NCBI RefSeq assembly: GCF_006345805.1
Contig: NC_043003.1
Location: 104,160,001-104,224,000 of the forward strand
Direction: 5' to 3'
Origin: Octopus sinensis
Lineage: Eukaryota
Length of the DNA: 64,000 nucleotides
Shown piece by piece: positions 29,586 through 57,900 of this stretch (positions are counted from its first letter, which is position 1; each line of letters opens with the position of its first letter). A model generated the notes under the pieces. It was given only the letters and a program-made list of their open reading frames with translations. It ran no database searches and was not told the DNA's origin. The translations under genes were made by a program, and so were the position numbers.

Positions 29586-29666
29586 TGTTGTTGCTATTGC
29601 GCCTCCACTGTTGTTGCTACTGCGCCTCCACTGTTGTTGCTACTGCGCCTCCACTGTTGTTGCTAC
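29575..29666. repeat. 4 x 23-bp tandem repeat of the SINE 5' junction
   Basis: tgcgcctccactgttgttgcta(t/c) four times. Confidence 0.95.
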
Positions 29667-34504: not shown

Positions 34505-35055
34505 AAAATCAAATTCGATGACTGGCATCTGTGCTAGCAGGGTGCAAAGAGCACCATACGAACGTGATCGTTGACAGAGCGGTTAACTGGCTTCCGTGCC
34601 AGTGGCACTTAAAAGGCACCATCGAGCGTGATTGTTACTAGCGTCGCCTAACTGGCACTTGTGCCCATGCTAGTAGGGTATTAAGAGCACCATCCGAGTG
34701 TGATTGTTGCCAGAGCAGCCAATTGGCTTCCGTGCCAGTGGCACATAAAAGGGCACCATTCGAGCATGATTGTTACCAACGTCGCCTTACTGGCACCCGT
34801 GCTGGTGGCATGTGTAAAAAGATTCGAGCGAGGTCGTTGCCAGTACCGCCTGACTGGCCCCATGCCGGTGGCATGTAAAAAGCACCCACTACACTCTCGG
34901 AGTGGTTGGCATTAGGAAGGGCATCCAACTGTAGAAACTCTGCCAAATCAAGATTGGAACCTGGTGCAGCCATCTGGTTCGCCAGCCCTCAGTCAAAATC
35001 GTCCAACCCATGCTAGCATGGAAAGCTGACATTAAACGATGATGATGATGATGCT
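34505..35055 (+). mobile_element. RTE-type 3' end with A-B-A-B-C array
   Basis: Unit-by-unit match to 18100-18610. Confidence 0.85.
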
Positions 35056-36287
35056 GGTATGAATTAGATGGTTTGACAGGAGCTGGCAAATCAGAGGCCT
35101 GCACCAAGCTCTTCTGTCTGCTTTAGCATGGTTTCTATGGCTGGATGCCTTTCCTAATTTGCCAACCGCTTTACAGAGTGTTCTGAGTACTTTCCATGTG
35201 GCACCAGCACCAACAAGGTTACCCAATAACTTGCAAGACAAGATGCCTCAACTGAGAGGAGATGAGTATTGAGTGCCTGATGAGGAGAGGGTAAGTGTGA
35301 TAAAAGGACAGAAATGGATATTTTGCAGTAGATGAGATACATGGCTCACCCTGGTGGAAAAAAGTGGAAAGAATGAGAGAAGGTGAAGAAGGTTTAATGG
35401 GTTTTTAGCCCACTAATTTAAATATAACGTCTGGTCTTCCTTCGAATAGCTGTAGGAATTAATCCAGTGAAAAACAACAACAATTTGTATGGGTTTTTGA
35501 GGCCTTCATGTACATGGTATAGTTATTCCAATCCAGGAGGAGAGTATTCGTACACAGCTTGAATATTTAACATTTTACAGAACAGAATGAAGTTGAATAA
35601 GAAAAGGTTTTCATCTTGCCACCTTCCATGACTGGTATAGTGGATTCCACTCAATTCAAATCGATGCTGGGTAGTCTAGTAGCAGAGAGGGAGACGATGC
35701 AGTTAGCAGCAGGCCGCTTGGTCAGCAACAAAGAGAGCGTTTCTTGGCTCTGCCCGTCTTTTTATCCCCTATCTCACGAGTGCCCTCTTGTTGTTAACGA
35801 TGTGACCAGGGAAGATAACTCCAGATGACCCACGTTCGGACATGGATTCAACTACGGTTGCCTACAAAGGTATCAGAACGTGCCCTCAAATTACAGGGAG
35901 AGGTATATAAGTGGAAGAGAGGATTAAATAGATAGGGTGGGCAGGAAAGTTTGTGAGTGTGTGAAAGAAGAGTGAGAGATGGTGGGGAGATGAATGCAGT
36001 GAGTGAACATAGGTGCCGGAAATAATGGTTTTGTGAGTGTGTGTGCATGCATGTGTGTGTGTGTGTGTAAATAATCATCATCGTCGTTCATTTTTCTCTG
36101 CAGGTTTTGTGGCTTTCGTTATGCCAGCTTGCGGTAGAAACTACTCTCAATCTAACCACTATAACATTCCTGTGCTATTATATAGCTGTGCTGGTACATC
36201 ACATCACAGACCATACCTCCATGCTCACAGGCATCATCCTTCTATATATTAGCTGATGGACTCAATGATTGTTTGTGTGTTTTTCAG

Positions 36288-36370
36288 GTGCTGTTGTCCA
36301 CTTGTTATGTCGAAATACGGAGAGAGCTGAGACAATTAAAGATCAAATTAAACAGACCACAGGAAATGAG
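36288..36370 (+). CDS. DHRS12: DHRS12-like exon (83 nt, phase 1 to phase 0)
   Basis: ttttcag acceptor and gtaaga donor. Encodes (G)AVVHLLCRNTERAETIKDQIKQTTGNE. The Arg after beta-2 is typical of NADP(H)-preferring classical SDRs. Confidence 0.93.
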
Positions 36371-36547
36371 GTAAGATTTCATTTGATATGCTATGTGGAC
36401 ATTTTATTTTCGTTTTAAAATTGACAACTCCACTGCATTGAGAGGTTACAACTCCAGTACATGTGATTAGAATGTTGCAAGAAAGAATTGCAAGAGAGAT
36501 TCTTCAAGCCAAGCCAGCTGGCAGGAGACCAAGGGGTAGAGCAAGAA

Positions 36548-36778
36548 TGTGAGCTGGCAGGAACGTAAGCACGCCAGGCGAAATGCTTAGCGGTATTTCG
36601 TCTGTCGTTACGTTCTGAGTTCAAATTCCGCTGAGGTCGACTTTGCCTTTCATCCTTTTGGCGTCGATAAATTAAGTACCAGTTACGCACTGGGGTCGAT
36701 GTAATCGACTTAATACCTATGTCTGTCCTTGTTTGTCCCCTCTATGTTTAGCCCCTTTTGGGCAATAAAGAAATAGGT
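36548..36778 (+). mobile_element. Monomeric SINE of the family that forms the 13.8-kb trimer
   Basis: gagctggcaggaacg...cttagcggtatttcgtctg...taaagaaatagg. Confidence 0.9.
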
Positions 36779-37476
36779 TGGTTGAATAATATTGGTAGTT
36801 GTAGTTGATCACACTTGGAAATCCAACTTGAAAGTGTAATGACAGATGCTTCTGATTGAACCCTATAAAGGAGGTGCCTGAGGGCTCTACCACCACAACC
36901 CTCCCAGGAATAATGGGCATAGAATGGATGGAATTTACAACAAATGTTGACAAATCTATTATTGTAATAGTGACTTTGTACTAGACAGTATTCCTAGTTT
37001 TTCCCCCTCAGAGCATCAGCCCTCTGGAATCTTCTCTTTGGTCATGCGAGTGTTGAGTTGCAATAATTTAAATAGAACATTAATGGTACAAAGCTTGCCA
37101 GTCCCAGAGGTCCTTTGAAAGTGATGGGCACTGTCCTTTCATCCAAGTTCATCAAGTAAAATAAAAGAAAAAAGAAAATATTACTATTTCGTCAACCCCA
37201 GAAAGGTGATATAGTTAGTCATTGACTCTGGCAGGATTTGAACTCAGTACTCAAAGGGATACAACTGAATACTAAGAATCATTTAATCAGTTGCTCTACT
37301 AATTATGTTAATGCATATTTCTCAAGTACAACAATAGTGACATCAACAAAATAACAAGTGGCATTAGCAACAGTAACAACAACAACAATAGCTAAGTCAG
37401 ATACATTATTCAAAAAGTAAATTTACTTTATACAGACACACATACACACATACTTACACACACACACACATATGTG

Positions 37477-37526
<50 letters not shown>

Positions 37527-38064
37527 TATATATATACACACATACATATATATACACACACACACATATATGTATATATGCACACTCACACACATACATA
37601 TACACATATAAACACACACAAATACGTAATTCTTTAATGGGATAGATTCATTTAACATTTCTTTCTTGGATCCATAAAATGCCCAAGCTGAAGCAGATGT
37701 AAAACCTCCATCATTGCATTCAGACAATCTCTGATGGCAACAATGGCAGATGAAAGATGTGTTAGCATATATTACAAAGTGCTGCTCTTTTACCTCCTCA
37801 GTTCTTCAGCTCTTTCGCATTGTTTCTTAGCTCTTCTCTGAAGACTTGCAGGATGCAATGAATTCTATATTCAATAGTTTCTGACTTTCTTTGTTTTGTC
37901 TCCCCCCACCCCATTTGTCTCCAAATGTCTTTTGATTCTCTCAATATTTCTTGTCTTAATTGTTTTGGCATTTTTGTCATTTTCATTGTTACTTTCTGCT
38001 TTCTTTCTCACTCATCCCTTTATTATCTTTCTAGCTTTCTTTTTCCTTTTTTCCCCACGTTTTT

Positions 38065-38152
38065 TTCTATCTATCCATCTATCTATCCATCTATCTATCT
38101 ATCCATCTATCTATCTATCTATCTATCCATCTATCTATCTATCCATCTATCC

Positions 38153-38247
<95 letters not shown>

Positions 38248-38248
38248 C

Positions 38249-38290
<42 letters not shown>
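38065..38290. repeat. (ATCT)n/(ATCC) tetranucleotide microsatellite
   Basis: Seen directly. It produces the spurious ORFs 37896-38480 and 37925-38476. Confidence 0.98.
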
Positions 38291-38714
38291 TTCTTTCTGT
38301 TATTTACACTTCTTGCTTTCCATTGCTCTCTCTCTCTCTCTCTCTCTCTCTTGTTATTTGAACTCTTGGCTCTTTCTCTCTCTATCTTTCCATATCTTTC
38401 TTTCTTCCTTTTTGTCTTCAGCTTCTTATTTATATTTTGTTGCCAAGATTCTTTTGTTAAACTCAGAAATATTTAAATAATTAACAATATCAGTTAATAG
38501 ATAAACAAAGAAACAAACTAGCAAATAAAAACAGAAAGATATATGAATGAATCATTGGAAAGTTGCTTAAAAAATGAGATGCTATTTTCTCTTCAGTGGA
38601 CTGATTGAATAAAATTTTTCTTATTTCTGTCGGACTACTACAACACTAACAACAATAGTATTGAACAAATAAAAGAAGTGATTCAAATAGAACAGTCAAC
38701 TTTCTTTTGCATTT

Positions 38715-39055
38715 GATCCATGCCAGCGGCACATAAAAGGGCACCATTTGAGCGTGATCGTTACCAGTGTCGCCTTACTGGCACTTGTGTCCGTGCTAGT
38801 AGGGTGCCAAGAGCACCATCTGAGTGTGATTGTTGCCAGAGCAGCCAACTGGCTTCCATGCCAGTGGCACGTAAAAGGGCACCATTTGAGCGTGATTGTT
38901 AATAACATTGCCTTACTGGCACCTGTGCCAGTGGCATGTGTAAAAAGATTCGAGCGAGATCATTGGCAGTACCGCCTGACTTGCCCCCATGCTGGTGGCA
39001 CGTAAAAAGCACCCACTACACTCTCGAAGTGGTTGGCTTTATGAAGGGCATCCAG
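38715..39055 (+). mobile_element. RTE-type array copy (partial A-B-A-B-C), tail truncated
   Basis: Same units as the 18.1-kb and 34.5-kb copies. Confidence 0.85.
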
Positions 39056-39189
39056 AGCATTTCTTGGCTCTGCCCGTCTTTCTATCTCCTATCTCACGAG
39101 CGCCCTCTCGTTGTTAACGATGTGACCAGGGGAGATAACTCCAGATGACCCATGTTCGGACATGGATTCAACTACGGTTGCCTACACAT

Positions 39190-39620
39190 ATATTTTACTG
39201 TTCCATTTCCAGATTGTATCTGTAAAGTTTGTGCAAACCACTTTCTTTCTTTGCTTCAAAATCCTAGCTTTTTCACTAAGTAAACCAATGTATATTTGTA
39301 TTAATGTATATTTGTAATCAAAGTAGAGGAGCTGCAGGTTTTATTCACTGATATTCCCTTTCTTGTTGATTTTAGAAAAGATGTTTACATCTGCCAGGCA
39401 GTTTATCTCTTTGATTGTTGATGACTTTTCTGTCCCAAATAATCATGTCAGGTCTCTTATCTTTGCACTTGCTAGAAGTTTTGATGGGAATGTTCTACAA
39501 ATATTCCTTGTATTGATATGTTTGTATTCAATAGCAGAGGTGATGTTTGTATTTATCCTAGGATAATCTTCACTGCTGGTATCATTGTATATTGTTTTAA
39601 CAACATCATATCACAGTGGG
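39190..39620 (-). mobile_element. R4/NeSL-type non-LTR restriction-like endonuclease fragment
   Basis: KCKDKRPDMIIWDRK followed by frameshifted EINCLADVNI resembles the RLE motif RPDI.I.D...IEV.CP.D.N. Confidence 0.5.
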
Positions 39621-40068
39621 AGATATTACTTTTATGACATTTTTGGGCAGCTGTTAATTACATGTTTTGTGACCACCACAGAAGAGTAAATTAATCAGCT
39701 GTTGCATCTTGGAATTTTTAAGGGCTTCACAGTTTCATTTATTCATGGGATATTTTGTAGCTGTCTCCTGCCCTCAGATTGCAAAAGCATGACCTTTGAG
39801 ATGTAATGTGATGTAGCAACTCTTGAGTTCAAGTGAGGTTACACTTCATGCTAAGTTTAAGTTTACTGGAACATGTCTATGCATAACGTTTTAATGGTAT
39901 GCAGAGTGTTTCTCTTTAATGGTATGCATAGACATGTATTTGCTGAGATATGCAAACCCTGCTCAAGCTCACTCCAAATTGTTGGAAAATGGTAAAAGAG
40001 GAGACAGAGAGCAGCTGTAAGGCAAGTAAAGAGCAACAGCAATGAGAGCCAAAACTACATGCATAGTA

Positions 40069-40436
40069 TCTTCTCTCTATATATAAACAGCAAAATGTCT
40101 GTGTGTGTGTCCTTTATACAAATCCACAATTTTTCAGTTAGAGGCTCTCGCACTTTCTGTGATCATTCAAAACCATCCAAGGGTGGTCGTGCACATCTTT
40201 ACATTTCCCCAGTCACCCCACAAAGCCATTAAAAAATCAATAGAAGTAACTTTTTTGTGAATTTTCTATCCAAAACCCAATCAAAATGCCTGAAACTTGA
40301 TACGCCAATTGAATGCCAGCTAGCTGTATGTGATTGGTCGGAGATTTGGACAGTATTCGCGTATATGTGCGCATGCATGCAGCTGTATATGCATGCACTA
40401 GCACTATGACCCGGCAACGCCGGGTCATAGTGCTAG
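40069..40436 (+). mobile_element. Non-autonomous Helitron
   Basis: A|TC start, perfect hairpin gacccggc-aac-gccgggtc, CTAG|T end. Confidence 0.88.
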
Positions 40437-40869
40437 TAGTAGATAAAACACAAGACAAATAAGTAAACAGTAAAAGAGCCATTAGGAGGAAAGGGAACAG
40501 ACAGGCACATCAAGAGTAATGTTGACTAGTTTTAGAAAGCATGGAATTTATAAAGGATGCAGTATCCTGACAGCTCAAAATTGACACATGTAAATTATTC
40601 GATGCTTCAACAATTCTGACATTAGAAACATGTTTCTGAAAGCCATGGGTTTGCTCCATGCTTTGATTTTATAAACATGTATATAAGAGATAGAGGTATT
40701 AAATTTTGAAAAGTGGCCTAAGTTGTTGGAATCATGGTGGATAATCTTGTGGTCTTTTACAAAGTCAACAACTTGGCATTGGTGCCTTACAAGTGTGTTG
40801 ATGCCCAGAGAAGCATTATGTTGAAGATATGGTTAATGACTGACAAACCATATTCATCTGAACAACTTC

Positions 40870-41135
40870 CATCATCATCATCATCATCATCGTTTTATGT
40901 CCATTTTCCATGCTAGCATGGGTTAGACGGTTCGACCGGTGTCTGGGAAGCCATGAGGCTGCACCAGGCCCAGTCTGATCTGGCAGTGTTTCTACAGCTG
41001 GATGCCCTTCCTAAAGCCAACCACTCTGAGTGTAGTGGGTGCTTTTTACGTCCCACCGGCACAGGGGCCAGAGGAGACTGGCAAACGGCCACGATCGGTT
41101 GGTGCTTTTACGTGTCACCGACACGGACGCCAGTC
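40870..41135 (-). mobile_element. RTE-type 3' end, inverted partner of 45578-45835
   Basis: The reverse complement aligns over about 255 nt and includes a 60-nt perfect block. Confidence 0.9.
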
Positions 41136-41314
41136 AGGCGGCGCTAGCATCTGCCACGTTCGGACGGATATTCTGGAAAACATGAGGGTTCCAAACTGGA
41201 AATGCAAACTGTTATTTTCTCATTTACTCAATCCACCTATGTTTAGCCTCTCTCGCAAAATAGGACTGAATGTGTGCATCTGTGTACATTTCTCTTCTCT
41301 GTTTTTTTTTTCAG

Positions 41315-41410
41315 GACATCACCATACATGCATTAGATCTATCTAAACCAGCTGAGGTTTATAAATGGGCCAAGAACTTTGCTGAATCTCATCACAAGCT
41401 GGATGTTCTG
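41315..41410 (+). CDS. DHRS12: DHRS12-like exon (96 nt, phase 0 to phase 0)
   Basis: Polypyrimidine-tcag acceptor and gtgagt donor. Encodes DITIHALDLSKPAEVYKWAKNFAESHHKLDVL. Confidence 0.93.
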
Positions 41411-41842
41411 GTGAGTAACCTCTATTAAGATATTTAAATAATTGTGTTTTTTACAGCAGAAACAATGGACAATGGTTGGAATCTGGTGGTGATTCTACCA
41501 TATGACCTGAAACTCATGGTAATAACAATGGTGCTGATGACAACAACTATAACAAACATGGCATACTCCTGCAAACTCCCTAATCTCAGTTGAAAATTTC
41601 TGGAAGTCCTTTCTTTATGACATGTATAACTTTTACATGCCATGGTAGAATATATGCAAAGTATGAAGGAAGCAATCACAGACACTGTACTCTATCAATT
41701 AGCTTGCAGCTTGTACTGTCAAGAAGAATTAATTTATATTTATTGTTATTATTTATTATTATTATTATCATTATTATTATTATTATTATGATGGTGATGG
41801 TGGTGGTAGCGGTGGCGGTGGTGATGATGATGAAGATGATGG

Positions 41843-42294
41843 CAGCAAGCTAGCGGAATCATTAGCATGCCGGACAAAATGCTTGGTGGCATTTTCCCAT
41901 TTTTATGTTCTGAGTTCAAATTCCACCGAGATCGATTTTGCCTTTCATCCTTTCAGGTTCGATAAATTAAGTACTGGTGAAACAATGGGGGCTAATGTCA
42001 TTGTCTAGTTCCCTCCCCACAAATTTCACACCTGTGCCTTTAGTAGAAAGGATTATTATTATTATTATTATTATTATTGTGGCAGCAAGCTGGCAGAATC
42101 CTTAGCACATTGGACGAAATGCTTAGTGGTATTTCACTCATTGCTACATGCTGAGTTCAAATTCTGCCAAGATCAACTATGCCTTTCGTCCTTTCAGAGT
42201 CGATGAATTAAGCACCAGTTTCATACTGGGGTCGATCTAATCGACTGGCCCCCTCCCTCAAAAAATTTCAGGCCTTGTGCCTATTGTAGAAAGG

Positions 42295-42332
<38 letters not shown>

Positions 42333-42560
42333 CATTATTATTATTATTATGGTGATGGTGGTGGTGGTGGCAGCAAACTGGCAGAATCATTACCATGCTG
42401 AGAAAAATGCTTAGCAGCATTTCTTCTCAAATGCTACCAAGGTCATCTTTGCATTTCATCATTTTGGGGTTGATAAAATAAATACCTGTCGAACCCTGGG
42501 GGTCAATGTAATTGACTTGTCCCCTCCCCCAAAATTGTTGCCTTGTGCCAAAATTTGAAT
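41843..42560 (+). mobile_element. Chain of three head-to-tail SINEs separated by (TTA)n
   Basis: Heads ggcagcaa(g/a)ct at about 41843, 42080 and 42368. The first two tails end agaaaggattattatt. Confidence 0.85.
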
Positions 42561-42567
42561 TTCTTGT

Positions 42568-42908
42568 TGCTGTTGAGCGAATAGTCTTTGTCCCAGAGCT
42601 CGCAAAGCGGAAGAAGTCGGAAACGTGGTCCTTTGCTATTCATAAGACCCGCAGAAGAGAAAGCAGGTCAACCCCCAACACCGAGTGCATTGACGGATGG
42701 ATGAAAGCGCATCCAGGCTCAGCGGTTGCGTAGGAAGTCGGGGACAAGAAACAGGAAGAAAGAACAAGAGAAAGTTGGAGCGAAAGAGTACAACAGGGGT
42801 CGCCACCACCCCCTGCCGGAGCCTCGTGGAGCTTTAGGTCTGGGAATCGAAACCACGATCCTCTGACCACGAGTCCGCTTCCCTAACCATTGGGCCATTG
42901 CGCCTCCA
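42568..42908 (-). mobile_element. tRNA(Arg)-like SINE, long-tail family, flanked by (CAA)n
   Basis: Matches 4056-4408 with a short internal deletion. Confidence 0.9.
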
Positions 42909-43775
42909 CTGTTGTTGTTGTTGCTCCTGAATCCTTAGTGGTATGTCTTCTGGCTCCTTACATTCTGAGGTCAAATTCTGCTGAAGTCAACTTTCATCCT
43001 TTCAGTGTCAATAAAATGAGAACCAGTTGAGCACAGAGGTTGATGCAATTGACTTTCCCCACCTCCCAAAAATTGTCAGCCTTGTGTCAAAATCATTAGG
43101 TTCTCACAGTTTTTCTCCTGCTTCTTTATGATCTGAGTTCAAATCTTACAGCAGTCAATTTTACCATTCATCCTTCCCTAATAGTCAAGTATTATAGCAG
43201 TGGATGAATACTCTCCAGTTGATGGTGGTAGATTCTTTAAATATTGTAGACAGTGTCCTTTGACGGCAAGTGAACCACTGGGGCATTGGTGTTTCATGGA
43301 TCTTTGCTTACGTGGGGAATGTGTGAGGTGTACCTGGGAGAATGTGCTCAGTTACCCATTTAGTTGTTTCAGACAGATCAGAAGGGATGCACCTTTCATG
43401 TTAACAGTAATCAATGTAGAATCAGCTAAGTTCCAACAACCAGGGGGCTTGAGATGCTTTAGGGTTCAAAATATGGATGTATGGTGGGTTGCCTTGATCA
43501 GGATATAATTATGGGATACAGGGCCATTTTAACAGCATTATAGGCCCCAGGGCGAATAAGTGCACTGGACCCTTTAGTATTTATTTGACACAGGTGAGGT
43601 ACCCATGCTAGTGATATGTGAAAGGAACTCTGTGCCAGTGACACGTAAGAGGCAACTGTGCCAGTGATATGTATTAATGTCAACATTTGTCACTCAGAAT
43701 GCTGAAAATATCCTTTTTATTTTCTAAGTTATAGAATCGTAGACAAATATATATATATATATATATATATATTTA

Positions 43776-43924
43776 ATCAAAATAAGCAACAAGAATGACT
43801 CCGGTAATTTGGTACGATCGTTTCGTACTACATCATTTTATTAAATGTTGTAAGTATTACAACATGACGTAGTACGAAACGATCGTACCAAATTACCGGA
43901 GTCATTCTTGTTGCTTATTTTGAT
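43776..43924. repeat. Perfect 56-bp inverted repeat with an inner hairpin, within a (TA)n-flanked insert
   Basis: 43776-43831 is the exact reverse complement of 43869-43924. Confidence 0.97.
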
Positions 43925-43999
43925 AATAATCACCCCATACAAAATTCTGGTGCATCTAAATTAAGTACCATATTCATTTGAATCTAAATTTTTGCTGAA

Positions 44000-44056
<57 letters not shown>

Positions 44057-44141
44057 TCACACATATATATGTACACATACACACATATAATTACTTCACA
44101 CATGTATACATATATGTATAAATCTATTTTATCTATTTCAG

Positions 44142-44223
44142 ATCAATAATGCTGGTGCTATGTTAAATGTGAAAACTGTTACCCTAGACGGATTGGATGC
44201 TGGCTTTGCTGCTAATACCCTTG
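44142..44223 (+). CDS. DHRS12: DHRS12-like exon (82 nt, phase 0 to phase 1)
   Basis: tttcag acceptor and gtagaa donor. Encodes INNAGAMLNVKTVTLDGLDAGFAANTL, including the NNAG motif. Confidence 0.95.
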
Positions 44224-44252
44224 GTAGAAAATAATTTACATTGTCTTCCCCT

Positions 44253-44287
<35 letters not shown>

Positions 44288-44580
44288 TGTATAGTTTTTT
44301 TATTGAAGTTGTATATGTGAACATACATACACACACGCACAAATATGTATGTATAGTTTTTTTTATTGAAGTTGTATATGTGTACATACATACACACATA
44401 TATGTATATATATGCTTGCATAAGATCATATATGGTTATGTTTGTAAATATATCTATTTTACCTTCTATGATGGAAGGAAGCTCACCAGACCTTTCATAA
44501 GGGGTTTAACAAGATCTTGAGGCTTCTTTTCAACATTACATGTGTCATATCAAAGACTCATTTGAACTTATATATATATA

Positions 44581-44711
44581 CAGGTTGTCCCAAAAAAATG
44601 TATACACACCTTAAATAATTGTAAATTTGTTATTCTTTGTAAGCCTAGTACTTATTCTATCGTTCTCTTTTGCCGAACCACTATGTGTATACATTTTTTG
44701 GGGACACCCTG
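44581..44711. mobile_element. Tc1/mariner-type MITE (28-bp TIRs, TA TSD) containing a SINE fragment
   Basis: caggttgtcccaaaaaaatgtatacaca / tgtgtatacattttttggggacaccctg match at 26 of 28 positions. Confidence 0.85.
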
Positions 44712-44719
44712 TATATATA

Positions 44720-45121
44720 TCTTTATATATAAAAGTGAGGTTGTGTGCTGTCTGTCTCCTACGATTTAGATTCCTAACTACTCCCACATTTTGCGGTGCA
44801 GTTTAACCAAAACCAGGTATCTTATAGTCGTGATTCATATCGAGCCCCTCTGGGTATTAGCGCACGTCTACGATGAGTCTACGATTTTTAAAAAAATTTA
44901 CCATCAATTTTTCCCATTTTTAATGCATTTTTGGCATATATAAGGGAAGTAACTCTCTAAAAATTTATTATTAAATCTCAGAACGTAAAAAGCTACAGTA
45001 ACCCCCCCACCCCGCCTTTGTTGTTAGCCATATTGAGATGGCTATTTTACTTTACATCTCTAAAAATGCTTATATAGTTATTTCCCTTACAAACCCGAAC
45101 AACGCCGGGCGATACTGCTAG
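44720..45121 (+). mobile_element. Non-autonomous Helitron, second family
   Basis: A|TC start, cccg-aacaacgc-cggg hairpin, CTAG|T end. Confidence 0.75.
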
Positions 45122-45202
45122 TATATATATATATATATATAGCATAATTAAATCTCAGAATGAGATTGAAACAGTAATCGCTCGATAATGTAAAGTATAG
45201 AA

Positions 45203-45253
<51 letters not shown>

Positions 45254-45393
45254 AAAAGATGTGTATCTGTGTCTACACATGTATGTATGTGGATGCAAAT
45301 GTATTTACAAATGTGTAATGCACTTGAGCATTGTATACTAGTTCATTATATTATATTATATGTATGTAAATATCTGACTATTTTATGTTTCAG

Positions 45394-45455
45394 CTCCACA
45401 TATATTGACAACACAACTAATTTCTAAATTATCCCAGAGTGATGATGCCCGAGTA
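45394..45455 (+). CDS. DHRS12: DHRS12-like exon (62 nt, phase 1 to phase 0)
   Basis: tttcag acceptor and gtaagt donor. Encodes (A)PHILTTQLISKLSQSDDARV, compared with human GVYILTTGLIPVLEKEHDPRV. Confidence 0.9.
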
Positions 45456-45577
45456 GTAAGTACCATTGAATTTTTTTACTAAATGTGCAGTCCATATATG
45501 AGTGTGTCGGTGTACACAATGGGGAATTTGAAAAAATGAAGCAGATATGTTCCATTAACTGTGTAATGTGAATATGC

Positions 45578-45835
45578 GACTGGCTTCCGTGTCGGTGGCA
45601 CATAAAATCCACCAACCGATTGTGACCGTTGCCAGCCTCCCCTGGCACCTGTGCTGGTGGCACGTAAAAGCACCCACTACACTCTCGGAGTGGTTGGCAT
45701 TAGGAAGGGCATCCAGCTGTAGAAACACTGCCAGATCAGACTGGGCCTGGTGCAGCCTCCTGGTTTCCCAGATCCCAGTCGAACCGTCCAAACCATGCTA
45801 GCATGGAAAACGGACATTAAATGATGATGATGATG
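45578..45835 (+). mobile_element. RTE-type 3' end with (GAT)n tail
   Basis: Family tail; inverted partner of 40870-41135. Confidence 0.9.
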
Positions 45836-47083
45836 AAAGGTGTGCAAAAGAGTTGTGTGGAAAACTGGATACAAGAGGAATTTAAATGTAGTGCACTGGA
45901 GCCAAGACTGTGTTAATATGAACAGGTGCTGCATATGAAGAATGACAGCTACATAAGAACATGTGAAGTAATCGAAGTGGATTGAACCTATGGAAAGGGG
46001 CTGAATGAAGAAGACTTGGAATGAAGTGGTTATGACTCATCTCAAAATGTTGCATCTCACAAATCATCGTCATTTAATATTCACTTTTCCATGGCTGCAT
46101 GGGTCAAATGGAGTTTATTGGGACAGATTTTCTATTGCCAGATGCCTTTCAGTTTTCCAAGTAAGGTAATATTTCCCTTTGGTTAGATGTAATTTTGCGG
46201 AATGCTGGAAACAAAGGATTATTTGTATGTCAAAGGCACTCATTTACCATTATCATGCAGTATCAATACAAAAAGACTCAAGCACACACGCATGTATGTG
46301 CACGCACGCACATGCACATATAATGAGCTTCTTTCGGTTCTGTCATCCAGGGGCTGTGCCCAAGGCACAGCCACACCATGGGATGAACCTGAAAGCATGT
46401 GACTGGGAAGCAAAGTTCCTAACCACACAGCCACGTCTGTGCCAAGAGGACAAAGACTCTGTTGATTGGAAAAGACCCAGCTATCTATACAAACTTGGTA
46501 AAATGTAAATTATAATAATGAGAGGGGTGCAATGATGAAGTTTCAGGTATATAATACATATCTACATCTGAAAATCTCACCCATTTGTACCTGTTGAGTC
46601 ACCATCTTCTATCTCTCTTCCCTATTTGTTACGCTCCCATCTTTCTGTCTGCCCTTTTCCTAGTCACTGTATCAGATCTATCCATATTTAATCCCTTTCT
46701 ATTCCCTTCATATTGCCCTACTTCTCTCTCCTTCAAATCACAGTGCTTGAAGAATGCAGGAATTTCATTGGATCTTTTACCACCCAATACTTTTATCCCT
46801 ATGTTTTACCTATGTTTCTCGTAGGTCACTCTTTTATTAACATCCATCACTTTTTACATACTAATGTTATCCTTCTATACCTCCTTTCCCTGGTCACATC
46901 TCCTCCCGTAGTCACTCTTTATTGACATTCATCATACTCACTTATTTCCATTTCTATGACTGTCCACCTCTCCCCCCTCTCTCTCACTCACACACACACA
47001 CACACACACACACACGCAGCCATTAGGGTTTGACAAGATGTGTGTAAAGCTAAGCACTTTATGGACACAAAACCCTGGGCATA

Positions 47084-47125
<42 letters not shown>

Positions 47126-47203
47126 ATTATTATTTGAGGGAATATTAATCCTAACTTACAGGGAAAAAATTCAATTTAGAAATACTAAATCAAATTTCAC
47201 ACA

Positions 47204-47246
<43 letters not shown>

Positions 47247-47252
<6 letters not shown>

Positions 47253-47554
47253 ATTAGAAAGAACCACCTTTTATCAATTCAAAACGAACAATTAAATTAC
47301 ACCATCTATAAAATTATATACAATAGAAATATTAAAATTAAAATAACAATAAACTACCAATGATTAAGTAAATTGCAAAAAATAATAAAAACATATATAA
47401 TTGGTATACGTTTTTATTATTTTTTGCAATTTACTTAATCATTGGTATTTTATTGTTATTTTAATTTTAATATTTCTATTGTATATAATTTTCTAGATGG
47501 TGTAATTTAATTGTTCATTTTGAATTGATAAAAGGGGGTTCTTTCTAATTTTTT
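47247..47554. repeat. AT-rich fold-back with ~146-bp arms between (TA)n tracts
   Basis: 47247-47392 versus 47410-47554: about 4 mismatches and 1 indel, with a 17-nt spacer. Confidence 0.95.
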
Positions 47555-47570
47555 ATATATATATATATAT

Positions 47571-48240
47571 GATATGCTGTACTGCTTGGCATTTGCAGCA
47601 GAAGCTCCAATGCAAACATTTCAGAGTGTTTGGGTGTCAATCTGAGGACATGCACCAGGGGTGATAAAAATCAAGCATCCAGTCAACATCACATCATGAT
47701 GTTTGGAGCGATCACTAATGATGGTGACATTATGCCTCCCTTCATCTTCCCACACAGCCTCAGACTCAACATGGAGGCCTACATCAAGTGCCTGGAGGAG
47801 GTAATGTTGCCTGGGTCAAGACCCTATGTCTGGCAACAGGACTCTGCACCATGCCACACAAGCAGGAGAACCCAGTCATGGCTGTCAGACAATTTCTGTG
47901 ACTGCATCACCCGTAACCTCTGGTCACCTAACTCCCCAGACTACAACCCTCTTGATTATTATGTGTGGGGCACATTTGAGCAAGAGACCAACAAAACTCC
48001 TTATAACACCAGAGATGAACTGAGGGCAAGGATTATGGCAGCATTCAATAACTTAAACAAGGAGACTGTCCAGAAGAGTTGCAGGAGATTCCAAAGTTGA
48101 AGCTAACAGTGATTTTATTGAATAAATTTACTCTTTAATATTTCAAGATATTTTTATGCAATTTTGGTAAATATATCTGTTAAAATGAGATGTCAGTGTT
48201 ATTTTCATTTTTGCATAATTTAGACAACAGTTTATTCATA
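47571..48240 (+). mobile_element. Internally deleted DD37D (maT) transposase remnant
   Basis: WQQDSAPCH...WSPNSPDYNPLDYYVWG has 37 residues between the second and third catalytic Asp. The N-terminus is fused directly to the catalytic half. Confidence 0.88.
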
Positions 48241-48503
48241 GAGAGTAGTGAGATATGAAGGTAGTAGAAAGGGATTAAGTATGGATGTGTGTGTGTATAC
48301 ACCCATAGTAAAGATCAGCAGTGATATTATGGTTCCAGTTTACCAACCCTCATTATCAGCTTGTTAAAAAGTACTGACTGTTCCTGCAGTTTAATAGGAA
48401 AAGAAAACGGTGCTAAAAAAAATTTATGATCAGAATATATATTTATTGCAAATACTGACTACATGTGAAATATCCTTATGTGTTTGACCACTTTCTCTTG
48501 CAG

Positions 48504-48699
48504 ATTATGGTCAGTTCTGGTGGTATGTTGGTCCAAAAGTTAAGTGTCACTGACCTCCAAAATGACAACAGTCCATATGATGGTACCATGGCTTATGCAC
48601 ATAATAAGAGGCAGCAGGTGATAATGTCTGAACAATATGCAAGGAAATACCCTAGCATCTACTTTTGCTCCATGCACCCGGGGTGGGCTGATACACCTG
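48504..48699 (+). CDS. DHRS12: DHRS12-like exon (196 nt, phase 0 to phase 1) containing the catalytic residues
   Basis: ttgcag acceptor and gtaagt donor. Encodes IMVSSGGMLVQKL...YDGTMAYAHNKRQQV...MHPGWADTP, with the catalytic Ser and YxxxK. Confidence 0.97.
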
Positions 48700-48749
48700 G
48701 TAAGTGTTATTTCTATTTTTTATTCTTTTTTTTTTATTATTATGTTGTT

Positions 48750-51140
48750 TTTTGTTTGGTTTTATGCTTATTTGGTTTTTCTCTGTTTGGTTAAGAGTTT
48801 TGCTTCTTTACACCCACATGATTTCAGGCATCCAGATCATTTGAACTTTTTAGGGTCATTCTTCTCTCAGCCAAGCAAAGCTTGCATCACCCAGGTTTTT
48901 CCAATGTTTTCCTTTCATTTGATTTTGTATGGCATTTCTTGTTTTAATTGTCTTATATAACTAACTAATGTTATAATGCTGTACCTTGTTTGGTTTCCAA
49001 ATAAGCACCTGTGATTATTTATCTTGACCTTAAAGAGGCCCTCCTTTGCTCCAACATATATCTGTGAATCTGTCTTCATTGTTGTTGTTTTCACTGTATT
49101 GGCCAACATCCCCTCTGCTGCATGAGCATCCTACCTCTTCACAGAGTTTTGGGGTAATCACTAATAGCTTTTTGACATTAAACAACAACCAAACACAATA
49201 TCTAAGTTATGCCTCTTGGATAATCCCCTATTACATATGAGACTCTGTAAAATGCTTATCCACTAATCTAAGGAAGGCCTTCCCATGCAGGTTTTCACAT
49301 TGGGTAAAACAGTGAGGCAAACCAAAAAACTTTGGTGCTTTTTCTTGTGAGTAAAGTTGATGTAGTTCTGAAACCTGCTGGTTGTTAGAGTTTGACTGTA
49401 ATAGGAGGATGCATCAAAACATCTTTATTCAAAGATAGGTTTGAACTCCTCCTACTGACAGGTTTGAACTCCTCTTACTGACACCCTTTACAAAGATTTT
49501 AAAGACTATAGACAAGTAGCAGAAGGTTGTTCTGATATACGACCACCATTAGGTTTGTATTGGAGCCTGTATGAACTGATGCCCAGATTAAGTTTAATGT
49601 TTAAGAAATTTACTACTGTAAGTTGGATCTCTATGGTTACCTCAGTCCTAAGGAGTTAAGAATGTGAATCAGGTATTTCCTAAGCCTAACCAGAGTGTGT
49701 CTGTGCCTCGAGAGATAGCTAAAGTGTTGTCTCTATATAAGCCAAATTGAGTTGATAGGAATTCCTTACTTAAGATGTCTTGTATAGATAATCCTATAAG
49801 GTAGCAGATAAGCATGCGGTTGTTTGTTCCCATTTTAACAATGAAGGAGCCTTTGGGATCTATTCATTTGACCCAAGCTGTACCTTTGTTAAACAGAAGG
49901 GCTTTTCTTGAGTGTATTATTACTTTTATATTCTTACAGTTAACATTGGTAAACTCCTTGATAAAAATAGGTGACCTTTCTACAGCCTTTTCAATATGGA
50001 TGGGTGAGAGCCCTCTATATCAAATTGCTTGAACCTTGCTCTGCTTCTTTCCTGACTGGTCTTAACCATGAAACTACTTCGTTATTGTTACACCATAAGA
50101 GATGGGGTGCTTTCCTTATGTCAGCTTTTATCTTCTGCAGTATGTTTCCCACACCAACCCAATTTCTGATTAAGCTGGTAGCAGTTTGGGTTGGAGAAAA
50201 AGTTCAGTTTGTGATCCTTGATGATGATAAAGATATTCTTCTTAGCTAAATTTTTTACTCTGTCTAGTATATCTAACTTGCTAGCTGTTTGGTCTTGTTT
50301 ATTCTCTGAGCCAGTGGTACATAAAAAGCACCATCCATACGTGGTCGATGCCAGCACCACTTAGGCTGGCTTCCGTGCTGGTGGCATGTAAAAAGCACCA
50401 ACCGATCGTGGCCGCTGCCAGCCTTCCCTGGTACCTATGCCGGTGGCATGTAAAAAGCACCAACCGATCGTGGCCGTTGCCAGCCTCCCCTGGTACCTAT
50501 GCTGGTGGCACGTAAAAAGCACCCACTACACTCACGGAGTGGTTGGCATTAGGAAGGGCATCCAGCTGTAGAAACCCTGCCAGATCAGACTGGAGCCTGG
50601 TGCAGCCTCCTGGTTTCCCAGAACCCCAGTTGAACCGTCCGATCCATGCTAGCATGGAAAGCGGACGTTAAACGATGATGATGATGTATAAGGAGAAACC
50701 TGTCTATAATTCTGTGTAATGCTATTCTCCAAGAGCTTATCATATGCATTGGTATATTCTCTATATAGGCTTTTGGTTTTATCTGAGAAAGGTAAAGTAT
50801 TTAAGGATTTGTGTACTTGAACTAAGCTTGCACTGAAAGGGGTTAGAGGACTTACAGAATTTCAATTTGGAGACAATGTCCAGTAGGTCTGCTTCAAAGG
50901 CCTCCAGTTCTTTAAGTCTGGCTGGGAACTTTCTAGATTTGATGTCATAAAAATTGTACTCTGAGAGCAACATTTCTTGCTCATAGAAGTCAGCCTTCCA
51001 TCTCGTGCACATTATTAGGGTGATGAGGATCCTTTGGAGGATCCTCGTGTAGAGTTTGTGTGCTTGTACTAAGTCACAAAGGGACTTGTTTTATATTTTC
51101 TTTATGGATATGGAGGTATACAATCTTGGTTACTCTACCA
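48750..51140 (-). mobile_element. Near-complete degenerate Penelope-like element (RT plus GIY-YIG), antisense in the intron
   Basis: In order: RWKADFY..ELEAFEADLL, DKTKSLY, IKDHKLNF, FKQFDIEG, HSRKALLF, GLYRDN, VVNFLNIKLNL, YVGAKEGLFK..NNH, CKLCLAE. Confidence 0.9.
50310..50690 (+). mobile_element. RTE-type 3' end with three ~62-bp units, nested in the Penelope element
   Basis: Repeated aaaaagcacc...gccag..ctgg..ggtggca units followed by the family tail. Confidence 0.88.
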
Positions 51141-51563
51141 AAAACAAACATATCCATGCTATGCTGCTATGGGTAGTAGTTGTTGTCATGGTCATGATGA
51201 CAGCTGCTGTGGTGGTGGTTATAGTGGCAGTGATGGTGATGGTGGTAGAGTGAGGCGGGTGGCAGGCAGACAAAGAGAAATAGTAAGGGTTACTGTTACT
51301 ATAACAACCACACATGCACACACACTCACACATACACACACTCACACAGAATCACATAAATGCACTTAACTTTATAAACCCACAGACAGAGTAACATACA
51401 AATGCACATGTCCACAACAACCGAAGGACTGATAGGGCCCCAGATTAAATGCTCAAAAATATTTACTTTTCTCCATTCATATTCTGTGTTCAAATCCCAC
51501 TTGTACCAGTAAGGGAAATCAATATCATAAAATAAAAGTAAAATATTTGTTTCATGTTAACAG

Positions 51564-51701
51564 GAGTTGAAACTGCCATGCCAGGCTTCTATTCTAAAAT
51601 GAAGGATCGCCTCCGTACACCTCAACAAGGGGCTGACACTGCGTTGTGGCTTGCAATTGCTTCAGCTCCAAAGACTTTTGTTAGTGGACAATTTTTTCAA
51701 G
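51564..51701 (+). CDS. DHRS12: DHRS12-like exon (138 nt, phase 1 to phase 1)
   Basis: taacag acceptor and gtatgt donor. Encodes (G)VETAMPGFYSKMKDRLRTPQQGADTALWLAIASAPKTFVSGQFFQ. Confidence 0.96.
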
Positions 51702-54952: not shown

Positions 54953-57900
54953 ATGTTCAACAAAGGAACACGCTCCTTGTCGATGAAAACTGAAAATGAG
55001 GAAAGAATTGAGAATATGAATATCGAATGGCCTAAACTTAATGACATCACCATGGTGAAAAATGTTTCGTCTCTAAGCAACATTAAAACTTTCGGTGTCA
55101 ACAACAACAACCTCAACAGCAGCAGCAGTGACAACAACAACAACACCAATAATAACAGCAACAACAATATGAAAGAAATGAAACATAAAAACGCAAATAT
55201 TGCCTCTGTATATTTTGTGTCTGCGGTGAGAAATATGGAAAGTTTCCACATAGATGAAGGAGAATTAAAATTGGCTAGAAAAATTGTTAAAAGAGATGGG
55301 AAAAGGGTGGCTCTAAACCGTCCATCCGATGTGATAGAAAATATCACAAGATGTATGGTAACATATTATTGCATAAGAGTCAAGTCTCAGCAGGTGGAAA
55401 ATGCTTCTGAGAGTGAAGTACAAAAGTGTCTCGAGCGCATGTGGGAACAAAAGACCCACATCACCCAAGGAAAGAAGTTTGCAACCATTGAGGTGAGATT
55501 TGGGATGGAAGAAGAAGCTAGATGTATTCTACAACCACCTTGAGGAATGATGACTTTTTCTTAATCCCCAGCTATCATGGCTAACGCCTTGCCAAGATTA
55601 GGGTGCTAAATGTGCCACCAGAAATATCCATTACCTGGTTAGTGGCAGCTGTCTTGGCAGGTTTAGAAGAAGATGAAGTCACAATATTGGAGGTCAAGAA
55701 ACTACCTAGGCAAAACTGGTTAGGTATAGGTATGGAACTGACCTTGCAATGGAAGCAGGACCATATCAACCAGATGTCCAATCTAATCGATCTCCTGGAT
55801 GGTATTCACCTGTCAGTAGTCATGGAGGGTAGAAAGCCAAGATGCCACACGTGGATCTGTAAATCACTTAAAGGTTTCCTGTCCCGAAACAAGGAAAAGT
55901 AAAGTCCCTAAAGGTAGTGCCTTTAGACTGGTGCTGGTTTATGCCTCAACAGGGACTAGAAGGCCAGATTTCTTCAGACATCTAGGAACATTCTTGGGAA
56001 CATCTCACACTTAAGTACTAGTGGGGGACTGGAATAGTATTTTGGACACACAGAAGGACTACAGGTTTAGTACACAGTAGAAGGGAGTGTAAACGCTTCA
56101 ATAACCTGCTCAGGACTTTCCAGCTTTCTGCATTTCTCTGCTGTGCCAGTGTGCACATGGAGCAACCAGAGTGAGTCATCCAGATCGTATTTAGATAGAG
56201 TTTTGTTAGGTCAGAGGATAGGGTTAGCGTAGGTTGTCCACAATTTAAATTGGTCGGCTACACAGATCCCAAATTTGTGATATGCTTAGTCAATTTAGAT
56301 AGGACCTGTAGACAGGGATCCAGTTACTGGAAGTTGAATGTGTCCTTACTGGCTTGCAAAGACTACAGGGACCAGATTAGCGAACTAGTTAAGCAGGAGT
56401 TGACAGAGGCTACCATCAGCAACCGGTGGTGGATTGCTCTGAAGAGAGCAATTAAATTAGAATTGATAGCATTTAGCAAAAGAAAGAAATAGATTAGAGG
56501 GAGAACTAATTAGCAATCTAGAAGAGGCTATTAGTAAAGGCATCACAATCGACCTATCAGTGGTGAGAATGGCCCTTGACCATTTCTGAGGTGAAACATA
56601 AAAGGTGTGTTATCAGAGCTAAGGCCCATGCGCTAAAACATGAATGAACTAAAGCCATCTGATGGGCGCAAATGGAAACAATCCACGATCAAATCTTTGA
56701 TGGATCAGGACAGATGCGTTCTACTTGGTTCTGAGCAGATGTGTGCTGCTTTCCAACAGCTGTTTGGAGAGGGTGATGGGTCAACAATGGTAGCAAACAT
56801 TACTTTGTACCCAGATGGCCTACCATGGCTCTTGGCTACAGATGCAAGATTCTGTGAAAAGTCGATTACAGCCTCTGAAATATAGGAGTATTTCACAAAT
56901 TGCCCGATTTGGATGGTCTGACCTACGAATTCTATGTTTTCATGCCAGATTTGTTTGGCAGATGTTTACAGTAACTTGCAGCAGATCAGGAAAATTCCTA
57001 GTGCAGTTAGCCAGGGTGTAGTAACACTACTGAGAAAGGACGCCCACAATGGGGACATGCTAGGGAATTTTCAGCCCATAACTCTGCTAGACACAGAGTT
57101 TAAGATTTTGGCCAAGGTTTTAGGGGAAAGGTTGGTGCTTGTCTTTGGTAGTCTGGTCGGGGAGGCACAAACGTGCACAATCCCGAGCAGGTCTTTCCAC
57201 GACAACCTCCACCTTATGCGATACATCATAGAGAGGTCTGAAACTAAAGCTGGCTTCAGTGGGGCCCTAATCAATTTAGATTAATCGAAAGCTTTCAATA
57301 GGGTAGACCATTGCTACTTGGAAGCCATCCTTAAAGCGGCTGGCTTCAGATTAATTTTCAGAGGCTGGATTGCTGCAGTGCACAGCGGTACCTCCTCGGT
57401 GGTCAAAGTAAATGGCCACCTATCAGAACTGTTTACTATTGCACGTTTGGTCCATCAGGGCTGCCTGCTGTCACCTCTCCTATATGTGCTGGCTCTTGAG
57501 CCACTACTGTGGAAGTTGGACCAGTTAAGAGGCCTCCTTTTCAAAATTGGACTCAGGAGGGCTGTGTTTGCATATGCAGCTGACATTACCATCATGGTGT
57601 TGGACGCCTCCAAAGTGGAGATGGTTGGCTCCATTGTAAAGGAATATAAGTCAGTTGTAGGGGCTAAAATCAATGCCAACAAGTTGGTGAGATTTCAACT
57701 GGAGAGGCAGATCAATGCTGTCAGACAGCTGCATCAGATGCTAGACTGACAGACCAGTTAAAATGCTTGGGGTCTGGTTTGGTCCTGCCCTCCAGGTGGA
57801 TAAGAATTGGGAAGATGTGACAAACAGGGTAACCTCTCTTACCCTGAAATAGGCAGAGAGGAAGTTGTCACTGAAAGGTTGGGCAGAGGTGATGAATGCC

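What the first reader, a model, noticed from the sequence alone, without database searches (positions are those of the whole stretch)
40870..45835. Inverted repeats flank exons 4-6 and predict a 240-nt circRNA with an endless ORF
Seen: same-subfamily repeats in opposite orientation end 180 nt before the 41315 acceptor and start 123 nt after the 45455 donor. They are roughly 85-90% complementary over ~255 nt by eye, with a 60-nt perfect block. The enclosed exons are 96+82+62 = 240 nt, phase 0 at both ends, stop-free, and contain an in-frame ATG. Established: this geometry drives back-splicing, and stop-free circles of 3n length can support rolling translation. Inference: a TE-created circRNA, plus an in-frame skipped mRNA lacking the NNAG region. 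The stem would also be an ADAR substrate.
Basis: partly seen in the sequence, partly recalled or inferred. Interest (0 to 1): 0.7.

Follow-up and report, generated by a model that had tools for sequence, protein, structure and literature searches.

The report
Inverted SINE pair around three DHRS12 exons
Two young SINE copies in opposite orientation really do bracket three coding exons of an octopus dehydrogenase gene. This layout is common in this repeat-rich genome, and nothing I could check shows that it makes a circular RNA, let alone a translated one.

Summary
The window is Octopus sinensis chromosome DNA carrying the DHRS12-like short-chain dehydrogenase gene. Exons 4-6 (96+82+62 = 240 nt, phase 0/0, stop-free, in-frame ATG) are bracketed by two copies of one SINE family in opposite orientation. 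The copies are 89% complementary over 261 nt, share a 60-nt perfect block, and lie 177 and 123 nt from the splice sites.

New findings:
- Both copies are lineage-specific insertions. They are present in O. sinensis and O. vulgaris, and O. bimaculoides has clean empty sites.
- They diverge at the same rate as the neighbouring intron, so there is no sign of constraint.
- The 240-nt, phase-0 property is ancestral, since Argonauta and O. bimaculoides have the same exon lengths.
- The same SINE family has about 15 copies in 64 kb, and every internal exon from 2 to 7 lies inside some inverted pair.
- Near-equal rival partners exist that would instead enclose exons 4-7 or exon 3.
- No annotated isoform lacks exons 4-6.
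- Published work mapped to this very assembly found only 296 low-level circRNAs in 18 tissues.

Verdict: this is an ordinary, probably neutral intronic repeat pair. It is a likely ADAR substrate and at most a weak back-splicing promoter. Whether the circRNA exists could not be tested here.

The parts
40872..41163 (-). Upstream arm: a SINE insertion in intron 3 of DHRS12, antisense to the gene. Its (GAT)n tail lies at the left end, read as (ATC)n on the + strand. Homology with the downstream arm covers 40878-41135.
   Evidence: Searches show the repeat match. Searches show the segment is absent from O. bimaculoides: the flanks 40438-40871 and 41164-41278 are contiguous in L001 apart from 4 nt. 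One search shows it is present in O. vulgaris. The sense strand is inferred from the tail and from the pattern of 5' truncation among copies.
45578..45836 (+). Downstream arm: a SINE insertion of the same family in intron 6, in the same sense as the gene, with an (ATG)n tail at its right end.
   Evidence: Searches show the match. Searches show that 45578-45829 is absent from O. bimaculoides, where L001 61998 and 61999 are adjacent. One search shows it is present in O. vulgaris.
40955..41014 (.). 60-nt block that is perfectly complementary to 45700-45759.
41315..41410 (+). DHRS12 exon 4 (96 nt, phase 0 at start). Its AG acceptor would be the back-splice acceptor.
44142..44223 (+). DHRS12 exon 5 (82 nt). 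It encodes the INNAG motif and holds the in-frame ATG at 44160-44162.
45394..45455 (+). DHRS12 exon 6 (62 nt, ends in phase 0). Its GT donor would be the back-splice donor.
36288..36370 (+). DHRS12 exon 3 (83 nt, ends in phase 0). It would be the donor side of the hypothetical exon 4-6 skip.
48504..48699 (+). DHRS12 exon 7 (196 nt, starts in phase 0). It would be the acceptor side of the hypothetical skip.
50366..50686 (+). Rival partner in intron 7: one or two overlapping copies of the same SINE family, 88% match to the upstream arm, duplex -451 kcal/mol. Pairing here would enclose exons 4-7 (436 nt, not a multiple of 3).
34783..35056 (+). Rival partner in intron 2: same SINE family, 79% match to the upstream arm, duplex -389 kcal/mol. 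Pairing here would loop out exon 3. It abuts an oppositely oriented copy at 35051-35210.

Best explanation
The feature is two independent, lineage-specific retroposon (SINE) insertions in introns 3 and 6 of the Octopus sinensis DHRS12-like dehydrogenase gene. They happened to land in opposite orientations close to the splice sites of exons 4 and 6.

Shown:
- The insertions arose after the split from O. bimaculoides and before the O. sinensis / O. vulgaris split.
- They have since drifted at the same rate as the surrounding intron.

Inferred:
- In the pre-mRNA the two copies can anneal into an imperfect duplex of about 243 bp.
- The most likely consequence of that duplex is A-to-I hyper-editing by ADAR and unwinding, as for other intronic hairpins in octopus.
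- At most there is occasional, low-level back-splicing of exons 4-6 or exon skipping, as splicing noise.
- The open 240-nt frame is an inherited arithmetical property of the coding exons. It is not a feature that evolved with the repeats, and no translated product is expected at meaningful levels.
For: - Identity of the locus: 100% match to GCA_006345805.1. Gene identified, and the full exon map.
- Origin of the arms: clean empty sites for both arms in O. bimaculoides, and both arms present in O. vulgaris.
- No constraint: arm divergence between O. sinensis and O. vulgaris is 5/288 and 2/259. Flanking intron gives 4/451, 0/151, 1/122 and 18/1162.
- Age: the arm-to-arm difference of about 11% fits the SINE burst at Jukes-Cantor distance 0.065 (about 18 My) reported for O. 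vulgaris. That falls within the 13-33 My since the O. bimaculoides split. SINEs make up 11.6% of that genome (PMC13282606).
- Abundance: about 15 copies of this family in 64 kb and 19 inverted pairs with arms 10 kb or less apart, enclosing every internal exon 2-7.
- Ancestral exons: lengths of 96/82/62 are conserved in O. bimaculoides and Argonauta hians, and the encoded 80 aa are almost invariant across octopods and cuttlefish.
- Isoforms: none lacks exons 4-6.
- Published octopus data: only 296 high-confidence circRNAs at low levels in 18 tissues, mapped to this same assembly, which the authors attribute to ADAR. Most editing is in introns and 3'UTRs, where hairpins are concentrated (PMC9699675).
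- General background: most mammalian circRNA output behaves as splicing error (PMC8365531).
Against: - By the rules worked out in mammals, this is a favourable layout for back-splicing. It is the strongest exon-enclosing pair in the gene (-461 kcal/mol), and its arms are only 123-177 nt from the splice sites.
- Intron 6 holds no internal partner, intron 3 holds only a 76-nt fragment, and the flanking introns are long (4.9 and 3.0 kb).
- With arms this close, the layout appeared in only about 3% of random placements for this gene.
- No RNA data could be examined, so a real and reproducible circRNA is not excluded.
Confidence: 0.7

Rival explanations
1. One reading: pairing of the two SINE copies brings the exon 6 donor next to the exon 4 acceptor, so a 240-nt circDHRS12(4-6) is made at reproducible levels in O. 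sinensis and O. vulgaris. It would be a lineage-specific circRNA created by TE insertion.
For: - Strong complementary arms close to both splice sites, with canonical AG and GT.
- Pairing across the exons beats pairing within an intron.
- The arms are absent in O. bimaculoides.
- Complementary-sequence-driven circularisation is well established in mammals and C. elegans. This rests on my own knowledge, plus Ivanov et al. 2015 as cited in PMC9699675.
Against: - There is no RNA evidence.
- Octopus circRNAs are few and weakly expressed even though SINEs fill 11.6% of the genome, so the layout alone predicts poorly.
- Near-equal rival partners exist in introns 7 and 2.
- The stem shows no sequence constraint.
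- High ADAR activity is reported to oppose this route.
Confidence: 0.15
2. The circle is translated round and round from the in-frame ATG, which is Met130 of DHRS12. The product would be concatemers of an 80-aa fragment of the dehydrogenase.
For: - The circle is 3n long with no stop in the coding frame and an ATG at codon 39.
- Rolling-circle ORFs are translated from some human circRNAs and reporters (PMC9242994).
Against: - It requires the circle to exist in the first place.
- The open frame follows automatically for coding exons that sum to 3n, and it is ancestral.
- No internal ribosome entry element has been shown.
- Human rolling-circle products are of low abundance and quickly degraded.
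- A repeated internal piece of a Rossmann fold is unlikely to fold.
Confidence: 0.02
3. The looped-out exons 4-6 are skipped, giving an in-frame mRNA that encodes a 270-aa protein without residues 92-171, which include the NNAG motif.
For: The exon 3 to exon 7 join is in frame. Looping by intronic complementarity is known to favour skipping (my own knowledge).
Against: - No such isoform is among the annotated or collected proteins. The only variants, of 423 and 446 aa, differ at the termini.
- A 270-aa form would have ranked near the top.
- The deleted 80 aa are almost invariant across cephalopods, so the product would be non-functional.
Confidence: 0.08
4. The upstream arm pairs mainly with another copy. 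Pairing with the intron 7 copy would give an exon 4-7 circle of 436 nt, which is not open-ended. Pairing with the intron 2 copy would loop out exon 3.
For: Duplex energies are -451 and -389 kcal/mol against -461. The intron 2 copy is transcribed before the downstream arm exists.
Against: - These partners are further away (9.2 and 5.8 kb against 4.4 kb).
- The intron 2 copy is less similar (79%).
- That copy also abuts its own inverted partner at 35051-35210.
Confidence: 0.05

Closest known systems
Exons flanked by inverted Alu or other complementary intronic repeats that circularise in mammals, and the reverse-complementary matches described in C. elegans (Jeck 2013, Zhang 2014, Liang & Wilusz 2014 from my own knowledge; Ivanov 2015 as cited in PMC9699675)
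   Same: - Two copies of one SINE family in opposite orientation in the introns on either side of an internal exon block.
- Arms close to the splice sites.
- Pairing across the exons stronger than pairing within an intron.
- Long flanking introns.
   Different: - No back-splice product has been shown here.
- The host is an octopus, where circRNAs are few and weak despite very abundant SINEs.
- The SINE family is unrelated to Alu.
Rolling-circle ORF (rcORF) circRNAs, e.g. circPSAP, circPFAS and circABHD12 (PMC9242994)
   Same: Circle length is a multiple of three, there is no stop in the host gene's frame, and an in-frame start codon is present.
   Different: Those cases have peptide and reporter evidence. 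Here the RNA itself has not been observed. The property is also common: about one ORF-bearing human circRNA in four or five has it.
ADAR hyper-edited intronic inverted repeat pairs (primate Alu pairs; intronic and 3'UTR hairpins in octopus, PMC9699675)
   Same: A long imperfect intramolecular duplex (243 predicted bp, with 45 and 60 paired adenosines on the two arms) inside a pre-mRNA, in an animal with very high ADAR activity.
   Different: Editing at this locus has not been examined. The arms are 4.4 kb apart, whereas a local foldback at 43776-43924 would form more easily.
Octopus 'unclassified' SINE families with microsatellite tails (PMC13282606; RTE-type LINE partners discussed in PMC9115989)
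   Same: About 290 nt long, no ORF, a (GAT)n tail, many dispersed and 5'-truncated copies, and an age that matches the reported SINE burst.
   Different: I could not assign the family a name or a polymerase III head type.

Membership tests
Complementary-repeat-flanked circRNA locus | Reverse-complementary sequences in the introns upstream and downstream of the circularised exons | tested here: met
   89% over 261 nt, 243 predicted bp. It is the only inverted match between intron 3 and intron 6.
Complementary-repeat-flanked circRNA locus | Pairing across the exons is stronger than competing pairing within either intron | tested here: met
   Intron 6 has no opposite-sense copy, and intron 3 has only a 76-nt fragment. 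However, rival cross-exon partners are almost as strong.
Complementary-repeat-flanked circRNA locus | A back-splice junction seen in RNA, resistant to RNase R | not testable with these tools
   No read data were available. A search with the circularly permuted junction peptide found nothing, but it also had no positive control. The published circRNA list is not in the held supplements.
Rolling-circle ORF circRNA | Circle length divisible by 3, with one frame free of stops and containing a start codon | tested here: met
   240 nt, frame 0 open around the circle, ATG at codon 39.
Rolling-circle ORF circRNA | Cap-independent initiation, and peptides or footprints across the junction | not testable with these tools
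   No proteomic or ribosome-profiling data. IRES-like elements were not assessed.
SINE (non-autonomous retroposon) | Short, non-coding, dispersed in many copies, with a simple-repeat 3' tail and 5' truncations | tested here: met
   About 290 nt with a (GAT)n tail. There are about 15 copies in 64 kb, many keeping the tail end and losing the other end. Presence/absence between species is precise.
SINE (non-autonomous retroposon) | Polymerase III head derived from tRNA, 5S or 7SL RNA | tested here: not met
   No Rfam match on either arm even at E up to 1, and no ARAGORN hit. This agrees with most octopus SINE families being 'unclassified'.
SINE (non-autonomous retroposon) | Target-site duplications | tested here: inconclusive
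   No clear duplication at either site. 8 nt of the O. bimaculoides sequence are missing at the upstream site, and the tail merges with the flank at the downstream site.
DHRS12 (classical short-chain dehydrogenase/reductase) | Rossmann-fold SDR with TGxxxGxG, NNAG and YxxxK motifs, and orthology to DHRS12 | tested here: met
   Pfam adh_short at E = 2.4e-22. 100% identity to XP_029638869.1, and 53-59% identity to most listed vertebrate and invertebrate DHRS12. TGGSSGVG, INNAG and YAHNK are all present.
ADAR substrate | A long double-stranded RNA region | tested here: met
   243 predicted intermolecular bp. Actual editing was not testable.

The most novel reading that the evidence does not exclude
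The two SINE insertions, which are specific to the O. vulgaris / O. sinensis lineage, switched on a reproducible 240-nt circDHRS12(exons 4-6) that the empty-site species O. bimaculoides lacks. That would be a naturally controlled example of a circRNA born from TE insertion in a cephalopod, possibly one that escapes ADAR antagonism. Its open frame could also be translated.
Probability: 0.1. Interest if true: 0.45.

Novelty: new member of a known kind. Interest (0 to 1): 0.15.

Why it matters
As it stands this is a routine consequence of a SINE-rich genome and needs no special attention.

Its one useful aspect is comparative. The arms are present in O. sinensis and O. vulgaris and cleanly absent in O. 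bimaculoides, while the exons are identical in length. This locus, and the many like it, would therefore be a natural test of whether intronic complementarity drives back-splicing in an animal with extreme ADAR activity. If it does not, that would support the idea that heavy editing suppresses repeat-driven circRNA formation in cephalopods.

Tried and rejected
1. Direct search for the back-splice product. I searched the 5.8-billion protein collection, which includes assemblies of public RNA-seq runs, with the 80-aa peptide rotated so the exon 6 / exon 4 junction sat in the middle. Only one candidate shared words with it, and it did not score. No linear fragments of the octopus gene turned up either, so there is no positive control and the result is uninformative.
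2. Search for a skipped isoform. The only high-identity (84-100%) hits to exons 2-7 are full-length cephalopod proteins: O. sinensis / O. vulgaris, O. bimaculoides, and a cluster that includes the cuttlefish Acanthosepion pharaonis. The cluster members of 423 and 446 aa differ only at the termini.
3. Published octopus circRNA data. The supplements held give only the total of 296 circRNAs, with no list and no DHRS12 entry.
4. Classifying the SINE head. Rfam at E up to 1 and ARAGORN found nothing on the arms.
5. Test for selection on the stem. There are too few substitutions for a compensatory-change test. The rates simply equal those of the flanks.
6. Assembly artefact. Rejected, because both arms occur at the same sites in two independent assemblies.
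7. Sepia pharaonis locus.


Full report
**What the window is.** The 13 kb compared (36001-49000) is 100% identical to Octopus sinensis assembly GCA_006345805.1, chromosome record CM016865.1. By offset, the window corresponds to about 104,160,001-104,224,000. It lies inside one gene on the + strand, the DHRS12-like short-chain dehydrogenase.
- My hand-spliced exons 2-7 match the annotated 350-aa protein at 100% identity and coverage. That protein is XP_029638869.1, and it is identical in O. vulgaris.
- Pfam gives adh_short at E = 2.4e-22.
- tblastn places the exons as follows: e2 19932-20065, e3 36288-36370, e4 41315-41410, e5 44142-44223, e6 45394-45455, e7 48504-48699, e8 about 51563-51700, e9 about 61290-61501. 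Exon 1 lies upstream of the window.

**Checking the observation.** All of it holds.
- The inverted repeat is 40878-41135 against 45578-45836, 89.3% over 261 columns, E = 3e-93.
- The longest perfect block is exactly 60 nt (40955-41014 against 45700-45759).
- The two arms co-fold into 243 intermolecular base pairs at -468 kcal/mol, against -104 and -84 for the arms alone.
- The downstream arm starts 123 nt after the exon 6 donor. Homology of the upstream arm ends 177 nt before the exon 4 acceptor.
- Exons 4-6 are 96+82+62 = 240 nt with canonical AG/GT borders and phase 0 at both ends. The frame is open around the circle, and there is an in-frame ATG at 44160-44162. My first attempt had exon 5 shifted by one base.
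- Joining exon 3 to exon 7 is in frame.

**What the repeats are.** They belong to an abundant family of about 290 nt with a (GAT)n tail and no ORF.
- There are about 15 copies or fragments in the 64 kb, in both orientations. Many keep the tail end and lack the other end, as expected for 5'-truncated retroposons.
- Judged by the tail, the upstream arm is antisense and the downstream arm is sense relative to the gene.
- Rfam (E up to 1) and ARAGORN find no tRNA, 5S or 7SL head. This agrees with a recent annotation in which nearly all recently active O. vulgaris SINE families (893 of 900) are 'unclassified'. In that annotation SINEs make up 11.6% of the genome (PMC13282606).

**Comparative evidence.** I fetched the orthologous loci of O. 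bimaculoides (L001), O. vulgaris (L003) and Argonauta hians (L004).
- In O. bimaculoides both arms are missing, with clean empty sites. Window 40438-40871 and 41164-41278 align to L001 58582-59020 and 59025-59134. Window 45456-45577 and 45830-46820 align to L001 61878-61998 and 61999-63050.
- In O. vulgaris both arms are present at the same sites.
- The two insertions therefore date between the bimaculoides split and the sinensis/vulgaris split. The literature gives 13-33 My for the former.
- The 11% difference between the arms fits the reported SINE burst at Jukes-Cantor distance 0.065, about 18 My.
- Between O. sinensis and O. vulgaris the arms differ at 5/288 and 2/259 sites. The adjacent intron differs at 4/451, 0/151, 1/122 and 18/1162. 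The stem shows neither conservation nor acceleration.
- O. bimaculoides has only weak inverted matches between introns 3 and 6 (70-74%, under 90 nt) and far from the splice sites. That makes it a good natural control.

**The 'endless ORF'.** Exon lengths of 96/82/62 are the same in O. bimaculoides and Argonauta. The encoded 80 residues are nearly invariant across octopods and a cuttlefish.
- The 3n, phase-0, stop-free property is therefore an old feature of a conserved coding region and did not come with the repeats.
- Any block of internal coding exons summing to 3n has this property. In this gene exon 4 alone, exons 5-6 and exon 8 have it too.
- In human data, rolling-circle ORFs are roughly one in four or five of circRNA ORFs. 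Their products are scarce and quickly degraded (PMC9242994).

**How unusual is the layout?** Not very.
- A self-comparison of the window gives 53 inverted pairs of at least 100 nt and 75% identity. Nineteen of them have arms 10 kb or less apart.
- Exon 2, exon 3 (three different pairs), exons 3-4, exons 4-6 and exons 4-7 are each enclosed by some pair.
The upstream arm can also pair with a copy in intron 7 (-451; this would enclose exons 4-7, 436 nt) and with one in intron 2 (-389; this would loop out exon 3).
- I simulated 15 randomly placed and oriented copies. Both arms fell within 200 nt of the outer splice sites of some exon block in 3% of trials, within 500 nt in 16% and within 1 kb in 43%. 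Across a whole genome that means very many such loci.

**Evidence about the predicted RNAs.** None could be obtained.
- The protein collection contains no octopus isoform lacking exons 4-6.
- A search with the circularly permuted junction peptide returned nothing, but it also returned no linear fragments, so it carries no weight.
- The only cephalopod circRNA survey in the library mapped O. vulgaris total RNA-seq from 18 tissues to this same assembly. It retained 296 high-confidence circRNAs, mostly found in a single tissue and at low levels. The authors attribute the low levels to ADAR melting intronic duplexes, and they report that most editing lies in introns and 3'UTRs (PMC9699675). Its circRNA list is not among the held supplements.
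- With SINEs at 11.6% of the genome and only 296 circRNAs, an inverted SINE pair by itself predicts a circRNA very poorly. This last step is my inference.
- In mammals most back-splicing behaves as splicing error (PMC8365531).

**Most likely mechanism.** Two neutral SINE insertions created a potential 243-bp intronic duplex.
- Its most probable fate in octopus is A-to-I hyper-editing and unwinding.
- Back-splicing of exons 4-6, exon skipping, or the alternative exon 4-7 circle may occur as rare by-products.
- Translation of a 240-nt circle is possible on paper, but nothing supports it.
- I put 0.7 on this reading, about 0.15 on a reproducible repeat-dependent circRNA, and about 0.02 on rolling translation.

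**Comparison with known systems and novelty.** The locus works, if it works at all, like the exons flanked by inverted Alu copies in primates. It meets the sequence-level criteria for that class and for the rolling-circle ORF class. The defining RNA-level and protein-level criteria could not be tested. It is one more instance of a known kind and not a new one.
- Its only real value is as one of many natural presence/absence contrasts between octopus species. These could test whether intronic complementarity drives back-splicing in an animal with very high ADAR activity.
- The decisive data already exist (SRA PRJNA791920).

Noticed in passing
window 43776-43924 (intron 4): A near-perfect foldback: 64-nt arms, 97% complementary, 21-nt loop, RNA MFE -105 kcal/mol. 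It is 100% identical in O. vulgaris and has no counterpart in the O. bimaculoides locus. It is single-copy in all loci held. Rfam gives only sub-threshold miRNA-like matches. It would form a local dsRNA (ADAR or Dicer substrate) more easily than the distant SINE pair.
   Followed up: partly
window 44583-44716 (intron 5): A MITE-like element with terminal inverted repeats of about 33 nt. Its 58-nt core recurs 7 more times in the window. It lies inside a 650-nt stretch (44581-45233) that is absent from O. bimaculoides.
   Followed up: partly
window 41836-42560 (intron 4): Three tandem, same-orientation copies of a second SINE-like family, each followed by an (ATT)n run. The adjacent 42494-42909 segment is another insertion absent from O. 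bimaculoides, and copies of it occur elsewhere in the window (about 4147-4302 and 29253-29598).
   Followed up: no
window 34783-35056 and 35051-35210 (intron 2): Two copies of the same SINE family abut each other in opposite orientation. They would form an immediate local hairpin (-173 kcal/mol), which would partly sequester one rival partner of the upstream arm.
   Followed up: partly
window about 55585-58750 (intron 8, + strand): Long ORF fragments that look by eye like reverse transcriptase from a LINE, in the same orientation as the gene. They were not searched against any family library.
   Followed up: no
protein P0122 (O. vulgaris CAI9726274.1, 423 aa) and P0123 (O. bimaculoides, 446 aa): Alternative annotated DHRS12 models with a different C-terminus (O. 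vulgaris) or a long, odd N-terminal extension (O. bimaculoides). By eye the extensions look like read-through into repeat-derived sequence, which was not checked. Neither affects exons 4-6.
   Followed up: partly
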